Positions 55,531-64,000 of a stretch of DNA of 64,000 nucleotides are shown here, piece by piece; within the stretch, counting starts at the first letter, position 1; each line of letters starts with the position of its first letter. Source of the stretch: Lytechinus pictus (lineage: Eukaryota). The notes under the pieces were generated by a model. It was not told the DNA's origin and made no database searches. It saw only the letters and a list, made by a program, of their open reading frames with translations. The position numbers were made by a program, and so were the translations under genes. The stretch spans positions 14,818,001 through 14,882,000 of the forward strand of contig NC_087263.1 of assembly GCF_037042905.1 (NCBI RefSeq), written 5' to 3'.

Positions 55531-55714
55531 CATTTTGGATGTGGGGAGGGGTCAAAGAGAGAAGTATTATTAGGAAAAGTAAACTAGATGAAGATGAATA
55601 GAAAGATTAAATACCTACACAGTCATATACTTAAGAAAAATGTATAACTTACACGGATATAGATAATTTTCTTTTGTAACCCCCCATGATATCAACGATC
55701 CATCCTTGACCACA

Positions 55715-56124
55715 ATCACCATCATGAACATCATCACATTATCGTCATCATCACCATCATCACGAACATCATCATCATCACAAACATCAGCGTCATTATG
55801 AACATCATCATCACAAACAGCGTCATTACGAACATATTCACGAACATCGTCATCATCATGAGCATCACCCGTCATCATGAACATCATAATACTCACGAAC
55901 ATCATCACCATAATCATCATCAGCANNNNNNNNNNNNNNNNNNNNNNNNNNNNNNNNNNNNNNNNNNNNNNNNNNNNNNNNNNNNNNNNNNNNNNNNNNN
56001 NNNNNNNNNNNNNNNNNNNNNNNNNNNNNNNNNNNNNNNNNNNNNNNNNNNNNNNNNNNNNNNNNNNNNNNNNNNNNNNNNNNNNNNNNNNNNNNNNNNN
56101 NNNNNNNNNNNNNNNNNNNNNNNN
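55715..56124. repeat. (CAT)n degenerate microsatellite running into an assembly gap (N 55926-56124)
   Basis: directly visible. Confidence 0.95.
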
Positions 56125-56211
56125 AAATATCATTGGATTTTCATCCATTATGTAACTGCAATTAAAATAAGTATTACAAAATACACGCATACTGCTTTGA
56201 AATAGTTTGTT

Positions 56212-56217
56212 TTTATT
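56212..56217 (-). terminator. candidate polyadenylation signal for the NAV gene (~4 kb 3'UTR)
   Basis: AATAAA on the minus strand at the end of a long AT-rich, repeat-poor stretch downstream of the NAV stop. Confidence 0.4.
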
Positions 56218-58151
56218 GTGATTTGGGAGGAAATATTTACTTTTCAGCAAAAAAGTGAGAAGTACTAGATTTTACACAAAACAAAGAATCATCTTTAGAA
56301 AAATCACAATGATATAAACCACATCATAAATCTTGGAAACTCTCTTCCTTTTATAATATCTTTCTCTTTTATACAAAATTACTATATAGTAGTTGTCAAA
56401 TTTTGCACTAGTTTTATACAAAGAAGAAAAGGGAAAAAATCACCCTTTCATTTACTCATGCATATAACGTCTTCATGAAAATCCGCAGTCCTACATTTCA
56501 TTTAATGTATGTTTGTCACAAATCACTGAACATTAATTTAAAATCAAAATTAAAATTAAAATAAAAAAGTGAAATAAAAGTTGTTTAAAATTTATAAAAA
56601 GGCAGAATGCAAGAGAAAACATGTAAGCACAATTTCCTTGATCAAGCTAAGTGCGTAGACATATTTTGTACACATGTACACAAATCCATGTGCAGAGGAT
56701 ATAGACTTAAAAAGGATAAGTGCGCAAACAACTTTATTCATGAGATAACTAAAACATTCATCTCAAGTCGACCAGAACAGGAAACTCCTTGCTATAATAA
56801 AATGCTTTGCTTGTCAATTGTGTAGCCAGCTTTCAAGCAATCGTTCACTTATACATGTAATTTGTGTAACTACAGTGCATGTAAAAACTAAACAGACTTA
56901 CAGTGTAACTTAGTATACATTGATGATCAATTCTTAAAAAGAATTAAGCCATAGATTGTAAAACAAATGAAGCAACTACAGACTAAATTTTAAAGAATTT
57001 GCCTGAAGGTTGGTCGGTCATTTTGACAACAATGAACTGGGAAAAAGCACTGCAGCATCATACATGTACATGTAGCATGGCAAATAGTTCTTTCGTTTTG
57101 CAACATATATGAATCACTTTCACATATTTCACCTATCCATTAGTTCAATTATTGTCTAACAGTAACAAAATACCACAAGATTTATATGGTATCATGCGTC
57201 TCTAGGAACTGATCATACCTACTAATAGACCTGACTGTCTGTGTAAAACTTTGTTTTATATCGAATAAAAATTGTTTATAATATAAAATTCTCAAAATTT
57301 CATAATGAAAGATTCATTAAAAAAAAAATTGCTTTGGCACAAAATGAACAAATACAGCTTCTCTTCACAAACATCTGTAAGTACTTTGAGGAATTATTTG
57401 TAATGCCATTCTTTTATTAATTTCCAGAACAAAAGATTTCCCTTCCAAAGAAATCAGGATATTTTGCATTTGAATTTTACTTTGAAATCGTAGAACTTAA
57501 AAAGAAAAGTAAATTAATATTAATGAAAATCTGACAATTATTTGGAACTTTTCTCAGAAACAACTGTCTGATAAAAATTCAATTCAAATCAATTTCAATT
57601 CACTTCCAATGACACGCAATTATAAAATATTAGGCAGGATTAAACAAAAAAAATACATAAATTCAGACATACATTTTTAATGAAAAATTTTAGATGAAAA
57701 ATTAGAACATTTTGTTCAAAACCTTCAAAAAAATGAAGAAAATCAAGGATTCCAAGCAAAAAGCACCTTAATTATTCCTCATTAAAAAAAAATGAAATAG
57801 AAAAAAATAGTATTAAAAATCAACTTCGACGACAAATTGCACTGAATTGGTTCTATACACAAATACTGCAAAAACACATCAATAGAAATGATCAATGGCA
57901 TTGGGGCCAATGGTGAAATGCTATTTTCACTTTACTGCCAAAAGGTGGTATGTCCATTTTGGAAATTACAGACCGTTTTACACCTGCTTTGCCGTCTTTC
58001 CGTTTCATCCTTATCCCACTTGGTCTAATCGTAGTTAATCTGCAACCAGTTCGTCTACTCGGCATTTTAGTGTAATTTCCATTTACTAATTATCACAGGC
58101 TATACCTATTTTTTGTATAGTATTCAGTTGTTAGACAATATTAAACCAAAT

Positions 58152-60220: not shown

Positions 60221-60343
60221 TCAGACAGTGATTTCCACGGAGATGTCCTCGCTGCTCATTCCCATCGAGTCCACGCTGTCGCTGTCGCAAGAATGCGAGT
60301 TGGGACAGTTGGCCGCTTCTTGGAGTCTCATTAGCATGTTGAA
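60221..60343 (-). CDS. NAV2: neuron navigator (NAV2/NAV3, unc-53 family) final coding exon FNMLMRLQEAANCPNSHSCDSDSVDSMGMSSEDISVEITV*
   Basis: ttttgttgcag acceptor, phase 0; matches the recalled vertebrate NAV2/3 C-terminus NMLM(R/K)LQEAAN..S.DS...ESTL. Vertebrate paralog assignment is nominal. Confidence 0.85.
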   Translation of the reverse strand, partial: FNMLMRLQEAANCPNSHSCDSDSVDSMGMSSEDISVEITV

Positions 60344-62359
60344 CTGCAACAAAAAAACAAATTATTAAAAGCAATGTCAATAGACTGCTGTCAGGGGTGG
60401 AGTCCAGGCTGGTCTAGGGGTGGGTGGCATTTTCCAGCCTTACCCTTAGCCCGGGTAAGGTTTATAAAGTCTACGGGAGAAAGTTTAACCCTGATGTCTC
60501 GTGCCTCGAAGCTCCGGACTGACTCTATGGATTAATCATGCCAAAGCCTCTGGAGTATGAGAACTCAATCTAGACATAAATTTACCAAGTTCAGCTCTCA
60601 AGATAAATCTGTACTGTAAACGCACAAAAACGAAAATTTAATCTCACTTTAATAACATTCGCCCCTATTAGCCCTAAATGTTCATACTGATATCTATAAA
60701 TATATATAATCAATTATTTCCTTAATGAAAATAGATTAACTAATTTTTCATTCTTCTATTGTTATTTGTTTACTTATCTATCATTTACTAATTTATTGAT
60801 TCACAGATTCAATATCTATATTCACAAATGTAAAACAACTACATAGGATCAGTAAATTGCACAAAATATAAAAAAAATCACTGACAAAAGTTTGACAATT
60901 AGCCACCAAAAATAAGTAAACAATCATAAACACACTGCGACAAAAAGTTGATACAGAATCCATCAAAGTTTACACCAAAGAGTTGACCAAGATGATATAA
61001 AATACAACAAAGAACATTGAAACAAAGAGCTGTACACTATCCAGCAATATCATACTGAAACAAAATCAAATCAAAAGATGAAATTGAATACACAAAAGTG
61101 CTTTGATAGTCTATGAAAAATTTGTGACGCTGATTGAAAATTGTTCCAAATTAAATATAGCACAGTAGTTTGTGGGTGCGTTGTAGGTGGGGGGGGGGGG
61201 GACAAAAAAAATGCAATTTGCTTGCGTTTTTCTGAAAAATGCCTCCCCCTTTTGAAGTGATTTTAAAACTTTTATAATCTTTCTTTTAAATCACATCATT
61301 TTCATTACTTAAAAAAAAAAAAACCCTGAAGAAATCAAATCAATACATTCTCTATACCCCTCCTCTGTGAGGTAATTGCATTTCACATACAAAGTAAGTG
61401 CTAGATACTGTACAAATCCATAGGAAGAAAATAAATATATCTACAGAAAATCATTTTTCTCGAGAAATAAATAAATCAGACTTTATAACGAAAGGAAAAT
61501 AGCAGTCATAACACTAAAAACATCAAAACCAAATAAAATATCACTCTGAAAGATAAATTGTAAGTACAATGAAAGTTCTCAGGTATATACATAAGCGGTT
61601 GAAGCCAAAAATTGAGCACAACTTGAGGAAAGGGGCGTTGGATAGAAAAAGGGGTGCAAACATCTGCTTAAAATACAAGACAAAAAAATCTTAGGAACAT
61701 TGACAATTGACTTGCATATAGAACATGCTTAATAATGAAAATAATGCACACAGTGTATTCACAAATCAGCAAATTATTCTTTTCTTTTTTTGAAAGGAGT
61801 TGAATTGAGTCTAAATATATTTCTTAAATATCAAGTCAAAGAAATCTTCAGTTGTGTCTGATCCTGGGAAAATATCAATCATTTAGACTATTCTTATTTT
61901 TGAAAGAACAATCACAAAAGTAATATTGAACTTTCTGACTTATATTGTCATTTTCTATTGTCCAAAACATTGGGCATGGCAAATAAAAGAAATAACATTT
62001 GATTTTGATCTGATTTACAGGAACATTTTCAGCACCTATTGGAATACAAATCTTGAATATACATGTACAGCTACAGAGTTTAAGAAACTAATTCATTTTT
62101 TTCAAGAAAACACATTTTGAACATCTATCGCACACAAATCGACAACATGCATAGTAAAGGATCCACCATAATACAAACAGCCACTAGAGAGTGCATACAA
62201 ACTTTGATCCTAATTCCTAACTAAGGCCAAAGTCTAGCTACCGATTTCATAAAGACCTTAGTCATGATAACTTTGCCATAATGGTGTAATTACAATGGTA
62301 AAAGGGCTCAAAAGCCAATCAAAATAAAATTTTCCTTGGTAGTTACCATTATGGAAATC

Positions 62360-62578
62360 ACTGGCGGGTCCAGGGGGGGGGGGGGGTTGGTGGCACAGCC
62401 AGCCCGTGCCTCTCCCCCTTTTGAGAAGCAAAATGTAATTTGTAATGTAAAAATTGCATTAAAACAAAAGTGTGTCCCCCTCAAAATATTAATTTTTGGT
62501 TAAAAACATTTATTTTCTTGTCAAATTTTTCCTTGGAAAAATGTGGCCCCCCTTTTGGAAAATCCTTGATAAGCCCCT
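62360..62578. mobile_element. hAT-like MITE (family also at ~35112-35324)
   Basis: cactggcgggtccagggg ... gcccctg, TSD atggaaat/ttggaaat. Confidence 0.7.
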
Positions 62579-62761
62579 GTTGGAAATATTATCGAACATG
62601 TAACTGGATGTCTTTATGAAATCGGCCCAGAACTGGAAATCTCTGAGACCCAGACTGGATCATTTTCAAGCACTATATGAATACACAAAACTGCTAAGTG
62701 TTTAACTATGTTTTTTAAACATTCAACCAGTCCCTCCATACATAGGGACCTACCCTGTGCG

Positions 62762-62836
62762 CTAAATGGTAGGGCTCTCACAACTACGTGGGCTCGAATA
62801 GCCCGATGCCTCCTGCAGATGCATGAGCATGCTTAA
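62762..62836 (-). CDS. NAV2: neuron navigator alternative C-terminal exon LSMLMHLQEASGYSSPRSCESPTI*
   Basis: strong pyrimidine tract plus aaacag, same phase as and homologous to 60221-60343; GG|gtaggt donor 8 nt after the stop (exon 62754-62836). Confidence 0.75.
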   Translation of the reverse strand, partial: LSMLMHLQEASGYSSPRSCESPTI

Positions 62837-62984
62837 CTGTTTGGAGAATAGGGGTGGGCAGGGTGAAGAAAGGTGGAGGGATTCAGATGGAAGTAAAAAA
62901 AAAAATAGTATGTGAACTTCATTTCCCATTCAATGCACATGATGTAAAAAATTTGGGGGTGTTTCACGATCTTGAATTAAATTA

Positions 62985-63442
62985 TAAATATAATAATAAT
63001 AATAATAGTACAGTTCTTAAATACGCATAACACCTACAGGTCTCTATGCGCGAGGAAAGCAAGAAATATGGTGAGAATTGTTAAATTTAAAAATTAGACA
63101 TCAAATAATTATACATACATGTAAGATCAAAGAATATTAAACATGGATTGGACCTACATGTGACTAAGTTAAACATTCTGAAAGAGGTAGGTTTTTAAAT
63201 ATACTTTGAATTTCTCAAGCTGGGTAATATTTCTTAATGTCGGTGGTAGAGAATTCCATTGTGCTGGTGCAGCTTTTTGGAAAGCCCGATCCCCATATGA
63301 TTTGGTCTTGACAGTAATTTCAGAGAGAAGATTTTGTGAGCCAGAACGGAGATTACACTTGGGTTTATGAATTTGGACAAGTTCTTGAAGATAAGCAGGG
63401 GCAATACCATGAATACATTTGAATGTTAATATGAGAAGTTTA
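62985..63442 (-). mobile_element. 3' fragment of an L2-like LINE
   Basis: minus-strand TFKCIHGIAPAYLQEL...YGDRAFQKAAPAQWNSLPPTLR...FKVYLKTYLF, then a (tat)n tail. Confidence 0.8.
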
Positions 63443-64000
63443 TATTAATATAAATTTAAATGCCTGGTGCACGTTAACACAAAGATTAGTGAGTGATCGT
63501 ACAATTGGTATGTATGCTTGATTGCACATATTGATCTACATGATCAAGCATTGAAACCAACCCTAAAGCGCAAAGCTCTTAACTCTGTGATATAGGGCTA
63601 ATATTAGTTTAAAACCAAACATCACTGTAAGGTGTTCCATAAATTGAATTTAAGGTCACAATATCATTTCTTTTTACCTTGAAATCATTCAAAAACCTTC
63701 AAGTGATTTTTGAAATTAATTTTAAGATTGATGACAAACATGGTACAAGATTGCCTTGGATTAGGGACAAAATATAATTGTATAGCATACATATTCTTGA
63801 AATATGTATAAAAAATATGTACAATAAGTGAAAAACGGATGAGTTAGTATTCAGTAAATCATACAACAATCAAAGTATGATAATATATCACGTTCAAAAC
63901 TGTCATATTTTCTTATAAAAAATGCAAAATATACATGACAAATTATTCCTATGCATATTTATTCATAATAGATATGATCAGAGAAATTCAGCTTCCCCAA

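What the first reader, a model, noticed from the sequence alone, without database searches (positions are those of the whole stretch)
60221..62836. Neuron navigator gene has two duplicated, alternative C-terminal exons
Seen: two minus-strand phase-0 exons 2.4 kb apart with good acceptors encode homologous peptides, LSMLMHLQEASGYSSPRSCESPTI* (62762-62836) and FNMLMRLQEAANCPNSHSCDSDS...EITV* (60221-60343). The upstream exon has a donor (GG|gtaggt) only 8 nt after its stop. Known (recalled): vertebrate NAV2/3 end NMLM(R/K)LQEAANYSS.QS.DS...ESTL. Each exon keeps a different part of that consensus (YSSP.S versus MRLQEAAN/DSDS), which suggests an old duplication with both copies under selection. Inference: a cassette switch in which inclusion gives a short -SPTI tail and turns the last exon into UTR, with the stop close enough to the junction to escape NMD, while skipping gives the long acidic -EITV tail. 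This would change the potential PDZ-ligand end. Neither peptide appears in the ORF track.
Basis: partly seen in the sequence, partly recalled or inferred. Interest (0 to 1): 0.78.

Follow-up and report, generated by a model that had tools for sequence, protein, structure and literature searches.

The report
Navigator gene's alternative C-terminal exon pair
The two look-alike end exons of this sea urchin neuron-navigator gene are real and give the protein either a short or a long tail, but public annotation already lists both forms here and in ten other echinoderms and acorn worms.

Summary
Observation confirmed, interpretation largely supported, but not new. The two minus-strand phase-0 exons are exactly as described.

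RefSeq already lists both products at this locus:
- Neuron navigator 2-like isoform X3 (XP_063969749.1) uses 62836-62765 and ends ...SPTI.
- Isoforms X1 and X2 use 60343-60224 and end ...EITV.

The same pair of tails appears in protein models of 10 further ambulacrarians: sea urchins, a sea star, sea cucumbers, crinoids and two acorn worms. All listed isoforms of a nemertean and a brachiopod carry one tail only.

Exon A is under strong purifying selection. Urchin versus sea star gives 15 synonymous and 1 non-synonymous change. It is a 97%-identical island inside unalignable intron.

A GTAGGT donor sits 8-14 nt after the stop in six echinoderm genomes, although the stop codon and the spacer differ. 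This supports the cassette model, with the stop too close to the last junction for NMD.

Junction use and the cassette-versus-terminal question therefore rest on annotation and conservation. The PDZ idea is untested.

The parts
62762..62836 (-). Exon A coding part: 24 codons plus the TAG stop. It encodes the short tail LSMLMHLQEASGYSSPRSCESPTI*.
   Evidence: Translation. Residues 762-785 of RefSeq L. pictus isoform X3 (P0414) match 62836-62765 at 100%. It is 97% identical to S. purpuratus within otherwise unalignable intron.
62754..62761 (-). Eight untranslated bases of exon A between the stop and the donor (cgcacagg).
   Evidence: The spacer is 8, 8, 8, 9, 9 and 14 nt in six echinoderm genomes.
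62748..62753 (-). Putative 5' splice site GTAGGT of exon A.
   Evidence: The same hexamer follows the stop in S. purpuratus, D. setosum, A. rubens, P. miniata and A. japonicus, although the stop codon (TAG/TAA/TGA) and the spacer differ. No junction reads were obtained.
62837..62920 (-). Acceptor region of exon A: a C-rich pyrimidine tract ending ccaaacag. The flank is conserved.
   Evidence: Identity to S. purpuratus is 73% at 62861-62920, against 25-50% in the rest of the intron.
62681..62747 (-). Conserved intronic flank downstream of the exon A donor. It contains a G-run (ggagggact).
   Evidence: Identity to S. purpuratus is 70%. The motif is also visible in D. setosum and, in weaker form, P. 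miniata. A role as a splicing enhancer is inferred only.
60344..62747 (-). Intron between exon A and exon B. Under the rival model its 5' part would be the 3'UTR of an A-terminal transcript.
   Evidence: The A-to-B distance is 2418, 1852, 1582 and 2300 nt in L. pictus, S. purpuratus, D. setosum and A. rubens.
60221..60343 (-). Exon B coding part: 40 codons plus the TGA stop. It encodes the long acidic tail FNMLMRLQEAANCPNSHSCDSDSVDSMGMSSEDISVEITV*. The acceptor is ttgttgcag.
   Evidence: Translation. Residues 762-801 of RefSeq isoform X1 (P0412) and 755-794 of X2 (P0357) match 60343-60224 at 100%.
62837..64000 (-). Window part of the intron between the penultimate exon (window-equivalent 64297-64090, in L001:5591-5798) and exon A. 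It holds a dispersed repeat from 62975 to at least 63100.

Best explanation
The 3' end of the Lytechinus pictus neuron navigator 2-like gene (minus strand) carries a tandem pair of homologous coding exons. Both follow the exon that ends ...EGDPL.

Proposed mechanism:
- Exon A (62836-62754) is a small, stop-containing alternative exon. When included, the protein ends ...DPL-LSMLMHLQEASGYSSPRSCESPTI.
- The exon's GTAGGT donor, 8 nt after the stop, is then spliced to exon B, which becomes 3'UTR.
- A stop 8 nt before the last junction lies inside the roughly 50-55 nt zone that does not trigger NMD.
- When exon A is skipped, exon B (60343-60221) is read. It gives ...DPL-FNMLMRLQEAAN..., an acidic Ser/Asp-rich stretch, and the terminal E-I-T-V.
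- Both tails keep the bilaterian DPLxxMLMxLQEA motif. Only B keeps the acidic stretch and the conserved E-[S/I]-x-[L/V/I] carboxyl end.

The exon pair arose by tandem duplication before echinoderms and hemichordates split, and both copies have been kept by selection.

What is shown:
- Sequence, phase and splice signals.
- The match to RefSeq isoforms.
- Conservation and purifying selection.
- The conserved donor.

What is inferred:
- Actual junction use in L. pictus RNA.
- The A-to-B splice.
- NMD escape.
- Any functional consequence of the tail switch.

Odds: exon A is a genuine, used coding exon, about 0.95. It is an internal cassette rather than a terminal exon, about 0.75.
For: -: exact sequences, acceptors, donor and phase 0.
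- PF25408 AAA_lid_NAV1 on the upstream exons.
- the record carrying L. pictus XP_063969747-9 has the same length as the window's contig C19 (15,790,492). X3 maps at 100% to 62836-62765, and X1/X2 to 60343-60224.
- A-type tails (LSM[LI]MHLQ[EQ]A[SA][GS]Y[ST]SP...) appear as separate RefSeq or GenBank products in L. variegatus, S. purpuratus, Diadema setosum, Asterias rubens, Apostichopus japonicus, Holothuria leucospilota, Anneissia japonica, Antedon mediterranea, Ptychodera flava and Glandiceps talaboti. In nine of these ten a B-type product of the same gene is listed beside it; for Holothuria only one product, A-type, was seen.
- mean identity over 21 residues is 16.1 for A-A, 14.9 for B-B and 11.0 for A-B. 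Ser2 and His6 are diagnostic of every A tail.
- exon A, L. pictus versus A. rubens, has 15 of 15.5 synonymous sites changed and 1 of 56.5 non-synonymous sites changed.
- exon A is a 97%-identity island between L. pictus and S. purpuratus.
- the order penultimate-A-B holds in six genomes, and GTAGGT lies 8-14 nt after the stop in each.
Against: - No RNA-seq read or transcript contig was seen.
- Searches of the protein collection found no echinoderm transcript fragment carrying either tail.
- Gnomon isoforms can be built partly from cross-species protein alignments, so the eleven models are not fully independent of one another.
- The donor AGG|GTAGGT departs from consensus at positions -2 and +4.
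- A conserved U1-type site just after a stop could also serve to regulate polyadenylation rather than splicing.
- No hemichordate or crinoid DNA could be fetched, because the gene ranges are too long. The donor conservation is therefore shown only for echinoids, asteroids and one holothuroid.
Confidence: 0.8

Rival explanations
1. Exon A is an alternative terminal exon. Transcripts that use its acceptor run on into the 'intron' and are polyadenylated there. The conserved GTAGGT would be a U1 snRNP site that tunes this intronic polyadenylation, or a rarely used donor.
For: Protein models alone cannot tell a cassette from a terminal exon. About 70 nt downstream of the donor are also conserved between urchins. 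An AATAAA-like string (aaaataaatg) lies about 250 nt downstream at roughly 62510. Runs X1-X4, of uncertain type, hold 43-56% of the sampled words of a stretch that is mostly intron.
Against: Conservation falls to background within about 120 nt of the exon, so no long conserved 3'UTR or poly(A) signal is evident. The GTAGGT stays within 8-14 nt of the stop across three echinoderm classes while everything around it changes, which is the behaviour of a working 5' splice site.
Confidence: 0.17
2. Exon A is a decayed, unused duplicate (a pseudo-exon). The RefSeq isoforms that carry it would be annotation artefacts passed between species by protein alignment.
For: No reads were seen here. Gnomon does use cross-species protein evidence.
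Against: Between urchin and sea star, exon A has 1 non-synonymous against 15 synonymous changes. The frame is open, with an intact acceptor, stop and donor, in six genomes. Tails are 18 of 21 identical between a sea urchin and an acorn worm. The exon is more conserved than the constitutive exons beside it. An unused sequence would not behave this way over about 500 million years.
Confidence: 0.02
3. Functional layer, compatible with either splicing model: the switch toggles a C-terminal docking motif. The long tail offers an acidic, probably phosphorylatable Ser/Asp stretch and a PDZ-type carboxyl end. The short tail removes both and may have a partner of its own.
For: In alignment A2 the B-type and outgroup tails share an invariant Glu at position -3, and the sequences end ESTL, ESTI, ESVL, ESVI, EITV, EISV or EIAV. 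The DSD of the acidic stretch is invariant. A tails end SPTI, SPTM, SNSS, DQV or EGV, with no shared end. Within the first 21 residues, exon A is at least as conserved as exon B.
Against: EITV has Ile at position -2, so it does not fit class I (S/T-x-hydrophobic). At best it fits class II. No paper in the library links Navigators to PDZ binding, and the 2023 Navigator review does not discuss the extreme C-terminus. The structure models of the tails were too poor to use.
Confidence: 0.3

Closest known systems
RefSeq models of this very locus: Lytechinus pictus neuron navigator 2-like isoform X3 (XP_063969749.1, 785 aa) versus X1 and X2 (XP_063969747.1 and XP_063969748.1)
   Same: The tails and exon coordinates are identical: X3 uses 62836-62765 and X1/X2 use 60343-60224. 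The record length equals that of the window's contig.
   Different: Nothing differs at the protein level. The annotation is automatic, and no paper found here discusses the isoforms. Whether the X3 mRNA model continues into exon B could not be read with these tools.
Orthologous isoform pairs in other Ambulacraria, for example S. purpuratus X3 versus X1, Asterias rubens X3 versus X1, Apostichopus japonicus X3 versus X1, Antedon mediterranea X4 versus X1, Ptychodera flava X7 versus X1 and Glandiceps talaboti X2 versus X1
   Same: The same two tail types follow ...(E/A)GDPL. The genomic order is penultimate-A-B, and the donor right after the stop is conserved in the six genomes examined.
   Different: The far ends of the A tails differ (SPTI, SPTM, SNSS, DQV, EGV). 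Saccoglossus models show only the B tail. Ophiuroids were not sampled.
Vertebrate NAV1-3, and the nemertean and brachiopod Navigators
   Same: They share the AAA+ domain, the AAA_lid_NAV1 domain, and the ending DPL[LM]NMLMRLQEAA[NS]YSSPQS.DSD...ES[TA][LI].
   Different: Only one tail type is seen among all listed isoforms: 14 for Lineus, 11 for Lingula and many for vertebrates. No duplicated A-type exon is annotated. This absence rests on annotation only.
Stop-containing cassette exons that swap a protein's C-terminus, such as the GluN1 C2/C2' cassette and the PMCA 'a'/'b' site-C variants (recalled from general knowledge, not tested here)
   Same: Including a small exon brings in an early stop and a different tail. 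Skipping it exposes a downstream tail with a PDZ-type end.
   Different: Here the two tails are paralogous products of a tandem exon duplication and keep a shared N-terminal motif. PDZ binding of the Navigator tail has not been shown.

Membership tests
Neuron navigator (NAV / UNC-53 / Sickie) family | C-terminal AAA+ ATPase domain with a Walker A motif, followed by the NAV-type lid domain | tested here: met
   GPSGTGKT lies in the exon at 66836-66663. PF25408 AAA_lid_NAV1 hits the next two exons at E 3.9e-37 and 1.8e-6. The lid exon is 85-89% identical to annotated Navigators.
Neuron navigator (NAV / UNC-53 / Sickie) family | N-terminal CH domain and long disordered or coiled-coil middle region in the same gene | tested here: inconclusive
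   Matches to residues 59-98, 391-1171 and 1234-1868 of Acanthaster NAV lie colinear on the same strand at C19:15,006,569-15,112,009, 125-234 kb upstream. RefSeq products at this locus are only 785-801 aa and start at an internal exon. Whether a single transcript joins the two parts was not shown.
Neuron navigator (NAV / UNC-53 / Sickie) family | Conserved extreme C-terminal motif DPLxxMLMxLQEA | tested here: met
   Both tails carry it after ...EGDPL. Alignments A1 and A2 show it to be invariant or nearly so.
Alternative coding exons made by tandem exon duplication | Adjacent exons that are homologous, in the same phase, and each with its own splice signals | tested here: met
   BLOSUM62 score 50 against a next best of 33 in 104 kb. 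Both are phase 0 with AG acceptors.
Alternative coding exons made by tandem exon duplication | Both copies kept by purifying selection in several lineages | tested here: met
   Exon A has pN 0.018 with saturated pS between urchin and sea star. Exon B has pN 0.01-0.06 among urchins and 0.17-0.23 between urchins and the sea star. Both types occur in 4 echinoderm classes and in enteropneusts.
Alternative coding exons made by tandem exon duplication | Each exon is actually used in mature mRNA of this species | tested here: inconclusive
   RefSeq isoforms X1-X3 imply use. No reads or transcript contigs could be examined.
Stop-containing internal cassette exon that escapes NMD | A working 5' splice site downstream of the stop, with the stop less than about 50-55 nt from the last exon junction | tested here: inconclusive
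   GTAGGT lies 8 nt after the stop here and 8-14 nt after it in five other echinoderm genomes. Actual use of the junction 62754>60343 was not observed.
PDZ-binding C-terminal ligand | Carboxyl-terminal x-[S/T]-x-hydrophobic (class I) or hydrophobic-x-hydrophobic (class II), plus shown binding | tested here: inconclusive
   The B tail ends EITV, which is class II-like and not class I. Relatives end ESTL, ESVL or ESTI, which are class I-like. The A tail ends SPTI, with Pro at -2, and A tail ends are not conserved. Binding cannot be tested here, and no supporting paper was found.

The most novel reading that the evidence does not exclude
The A/B tail choice may be a regulated switch of Navigator function that is more than 500 million years old and found across Ambulacraria. 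On this reading the short A tail is not merely a loss of the acidic, PDZ-type end. It would have a specific partner of its own. This would fit two observations: the A tail is at least as conserved as the B tail, and its nucleotides are more constrained among urchins. It would give a tractable handle, by exon-blocking morpholinos in sea urchin embryos, on the unknown role of the Navigator C-terminus.
Probability: 0.3. Interest if true: 0.5.

Novelty: already known. Interest (0 to 1): 0.3.

Why it matters
The biochemical role of the Navigator AAA+ region and of its deeply conserved C-terminal motif is unknown; the 2023 review (PMC9877351) says so for the AAA+ domain.

This exon pair is a natural, conserved experiment. 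It keeps the DPLxxMLMxLQEA motif but swaps everything after it. It sits in embryos that are easy to manipulate, so it could be used to ask what the tail does.

As a genome-scan result it is ordinary. It is a correct reading of an alternative splicing event that automatic annotation had already captured here and in ten other species.

Tried and rejected
- **RNA reads.** The look-up of sequencing runs listed three raw rRNA-depleted RNA runs of the same species (X19-X21). Those 42 letters were sent to no search tool afterwards and were masked in the alignment script.
- **Transcript-derived protein fragments.** A 120-aa query ending in the A tail found only genomic read-through ORFs and vertebrate or other tails, and no echinoderm transcript with either tail.
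- **Genomic DNA of crinoid, hemichordate and new sea cucumber loci.** The Asterias X3 protein is not on record because only the longest product of a gene is indexed.
- **AlphaFold2 of lid plus tail for both isoforms.** Mean pLDDT was 43 and 45, and the tails scored 25-41. A helix is drawn over DPLxxMLMxLQEA in both models, but at unusable confidence.
- **Pfam on the two tails alone.** No family was found.
- **Earlier notes of the scan.** Only this same finding came up. The word 'navigator' is in no note.
- **Chance similarity.** Rejected.
- **Exon A as part of a repeat.** Rejected. The dispersed repeats lie at 62975-63100+ and 62355-62592 and do not touch the exon.
Full report
**1. The observation**

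On the minus strand, window 62762-62836 translates to LSMLMHLQEASGYSSPRSCESPTI*. Window 60221-60343 translates to FNMLMRLQEAANCPNSHSCDSDSVDSMGMSSEDISVEITV*.

- Both exons follow AG acceptors: ccaaacag|TTA and ttgttgcag|TTC.
- After the TAG of the upstream exon come 8 bases (cgcacagg, 62761-62754) and then GTAGGT (62753-62748).
- The preceding coding exon lies just beyond the window, at window-equivalent 64297-64090 (locus L001).
- That exon starts after tctcgacag| and ends GGT GAC CCA TTG|gtgagt, that is ...EGDPL on a whole codon.

**2. The similarity is not chance**

I compared the first 21 residues of exon B with every stop-free 21-residue window in six frames of 104 kb (the window plus 40 kb upstream). 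Exon A scores 50, the next best scores 33, and the mean is -19 with SD 9.

At the DNA level only 38 of 63 bases agree. Agreement is 15, 14 and 9 of 21 at codon positions 1, 2 and 3. Seven of the ten identical residues use different codons. This is an old duplication that has stayed similar as protein, not as DNA.

**3. The gene**

- The upstream exons hit Pfam PF25408 (NAV1-like AAA+ lid) at E 3.9e-37 and 1.8e-6.
- The Walker A motif GPSGTGKT lies in the exon at 66836-66663.
- A search of 1.84 billion representative proteins with the lid exon returned Navigators from many animals at 70-89% identity.

**4. The genome and its annotation**

Proteins named neuron navigator 2-like [Lytechinus pictus] sit on a record 15,790,492 bases long. 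This is exactly the length of the window's contig C19. A local tblastn maps them exon by exon onto the locus:

- Isoform X3 (XP_063969749.1, 785 aa) ends in 62836-62765 at 100% identity.
- Isoforms X1 (XP_063969747.1, 801 aa) and X2 (XP_063969748.1, 794 aa) end in 60343-60224 at 100% identity.
- X1 and X3 differ only in the tail.

**5. Other species**

Cluster listings and tails show an A-type tail as a separate product in ten further species. In nine of these a B-type product of the same gene is listed beside it. For Holothuria leucospilota only one product, A-type, was seen.

| Group | Species with an A-type product |
|---|---|
| Echinoids | L. variegatus X2, S. purpuratus X3, Diadema setosum X3 |
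| Asteroid | Asterias rubens X3 |
| Holothuroids | Apostichopus japonicus X3, Holothuria leucospilota KAJ8032124.1 |
| Crinoids | Anneissia japonica X5, Antedon mediterranea X4 |
| Enteropneusts | Ptychodera flava X7, Glandiceps talaboti X2 |

- Every A tail starts LSM[LI]MHLQ[EQ]A[SA][GS]Y[ST]SP. Ser2 and His6 distinguish it from every B tail and every outgroup tail.
- Mean identity over 21 residues is 16.1 within A, 14.9 within B and 11.0 between A and B.
- All 14 Lineus and all 11 Lingula isoforms, and the vertebrate proteins listed, carry one tail of the B architecture.
- The simplest reading is a tandem exon duplication in the ambulacrarian stem lineage.
- Absence elsewhere rests on annotation only. 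Amphioxus, tunicates and ophiuroids were not examined.

**6. Selection**

I fetched the loci of S. purpuratus (L014), A. rubens (L015), D. setosum (L016), P. miniata (L018) and an older A. japonicus assembly (L017). In all of them the order is penultimate exon, exon A, exon B.

Nei-Gojobori counts for exon A:

- L. pictus versus A. rubens: 15 synonymous differences on 15.5 synonymous sites, and 1 non-synonymous difference on 56.5 sites.
- Among urchins: 0-2 non-synonymous differences.

Exon B evolves faster as protein, with pN 0.225 between urchin and sea star.

An alignment of the whole stretch from the penultimate exon to exon B between L. pictus and S. purpuratus shows introns at 25-50% identity, which is unalignable. 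Exon A forms a 97% island, above the penultimate exon (87-95%) and exon B (85-92%). The 60-120 nt on each side of exon A are about 70% identical. Conserved flanks and reduced synonymous change (pS 0.20 for A against 0.54-0.96 for B among urchins) are typical of regulated alternative exons.

**7. Cassette or terminal exon**

No transcript evidence could be obtained (section 8). The indirect evidence is the sequence after the stop:

| Species | Sequence after the stop | Spacer (nt) |
|---|---|---|
| L. pictus | TAG cgcacagg\|gtaggt | 8 |
| S. purpuratus | TAG cacacagg\|gtaggt | 8 |
| D. setosum | TAG ctcgcggg\|gtaggt | 8 |
| A. rubens | TAA accttgtag\|gtaggt | 9 |
| P. miniata | TAA ccttgttag\|gtaggt | 9 |
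| A. japonicus | TGA acgtatcgtcgtcg\|gtaggt | 14 |

The stop codon, the spacer and the downstream sequence all change, yet GTAGGT stays within 14 nt of the stop in three echinoderm classes. This is what a working 5' splice site looks like.

I put the cassette model at about 0.75. The alternative is a terminal exon with its own poly(A) site, with the GTAGGT acting as a U1 site that tunes polyadenylation. I put that at about 0.17.

**8. What failed**

- The look-up of sequencing runs listed three raw rRNA-depleted RNA runs of the species.
- A protein search for short transcript-derived fragments ending in either tail found none from echinoderms.
- Hemichordate and crinoid DNA could not be fetched because the genes span 180-300 kb.
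- AlphaFold2 models of lid plus tail were too poor to use (mean pLDDT 43 and 45).

**9. Consequence for the protein (inferred)**

- Both tails keep DPLxxMLMxLQEA, which is invariant or nearly so in alignments A1 and A2.
- Only the B tail keeps the invariant DSD within the acidic Ser/Asp stretch and the carboxyl end E-[S/I]-x-[L/V/I] (EITV, EISV, EIAV, ESVI, ESVL, ESTL, ESTI).
- A tails end SPTI, SPTM, SNSS, DQV or EGV, with no shared end.
- The switch therefore removes a conserved C-terminal motif.
- Calling that motif a PDZ ligand is speculative. EITV has Ile at position -2, which is class II-like and not class I.
- No paper in the library links Navigators to PDZ binding.
- The 2023 Navigator review does not discuss the extreme C-terminus, sea urchins or hemichordates.

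**10. Verdict**

The cassette step and the functional step remain inferred.
- It is not a discovery at the level of the genome, because RefSeq already lists the isoforms here and in ten other species.
- This analysis adds three points: the pair is common to echinoderms and enteropneusts; the small exon is under very strong constraint; and a donor right after its stop is conserved across echinoderm classes.
- I found no paper describing this.
- Interest is modest.

Noticed in passing
G000:C19:15,006,569-15,112,009 (125-234 kb upstream of the window on the gene's strand): Matches to the CH-domain region and the long middle region of Acanthaster Navigator (residues 59-98, 391-1171 and 1234-1868) lie colinear on the same strand. 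RefSeq products of the AAA+ part in L. pictus, other urchins, Asterias and Patiria are only about 700-990 aa, while crinoid, holothuroid and hemichordate models are about 2,500 aa. This points to either an internal promoter or a split gene model.
   Followed up: partly
window 62681-62747 and 62837-62920: The intronic flanks of exon A are about 70% identical to S. purpuratus, against 25-50% elsewhere in the intron. About 20 nt after the donor is a G-run (ggagggact), also seen in Diadema and, in weaker form, Patiria. It may be a splicing enhancer. Among urchins, exon A also has fewer synonymous changes than exon B.
   Followed up: partly
window 62975-63100 (runs on past 63100) and 62355-62592: Two dispersed repeat families lie in the introns. 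The first has at least 30 copies at 91-97% identity on many chromosomes. The second has copies at 76-79% identity. Neither overlaps the exons.
   Followed up: no
window-equivalent about 70804 (L009), residues 146-152 of RefSeq X1: RefSeq isoform X2 lacks 7 residues that are present in X1 and X3 at an exon boundary. This is a second, small alternative splicing event in the same gene.
   Followed up: no
window 55615-56250; window-equivalent 66433-66603, 69243-69921 and 92623-93181: Long trinucleotide-type low-complexity tracts in introns read as poly-Asp, poly-Met or poly-Gly open frames. They produce the longest 'ORFs' in the region. The one at 55.6-56.3 kb flanks an N gap.
   Followed up: no
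L017:74621-74734 (A. japonicus GCA_002754855.1): In the older sea cucumber assembly exon B reads ...DSDTNSWTAVETAQKTCW*, out of frame relative to the current RefSeq tail (...DSDTNSLDSCGNSTEDLLVESVI). The old model PIK38908.1 also reads through the penultimate donor. These are probably an assembly indel and a model error.
   Followed up: no
proteins P0059 and P0060 (the eukprot entry has a copepod-like gene name; the other is a Logan transcript): Two Navigator products of uncertain taxon, one with a copepod-like eukprot gene name, end F[NS]MLMHLQEAA..HPLPEDD(LD)*, a short tail with the same His as the ambulacrarian A type. This may be convergence or a sign of an older origin.
   Followed up: no
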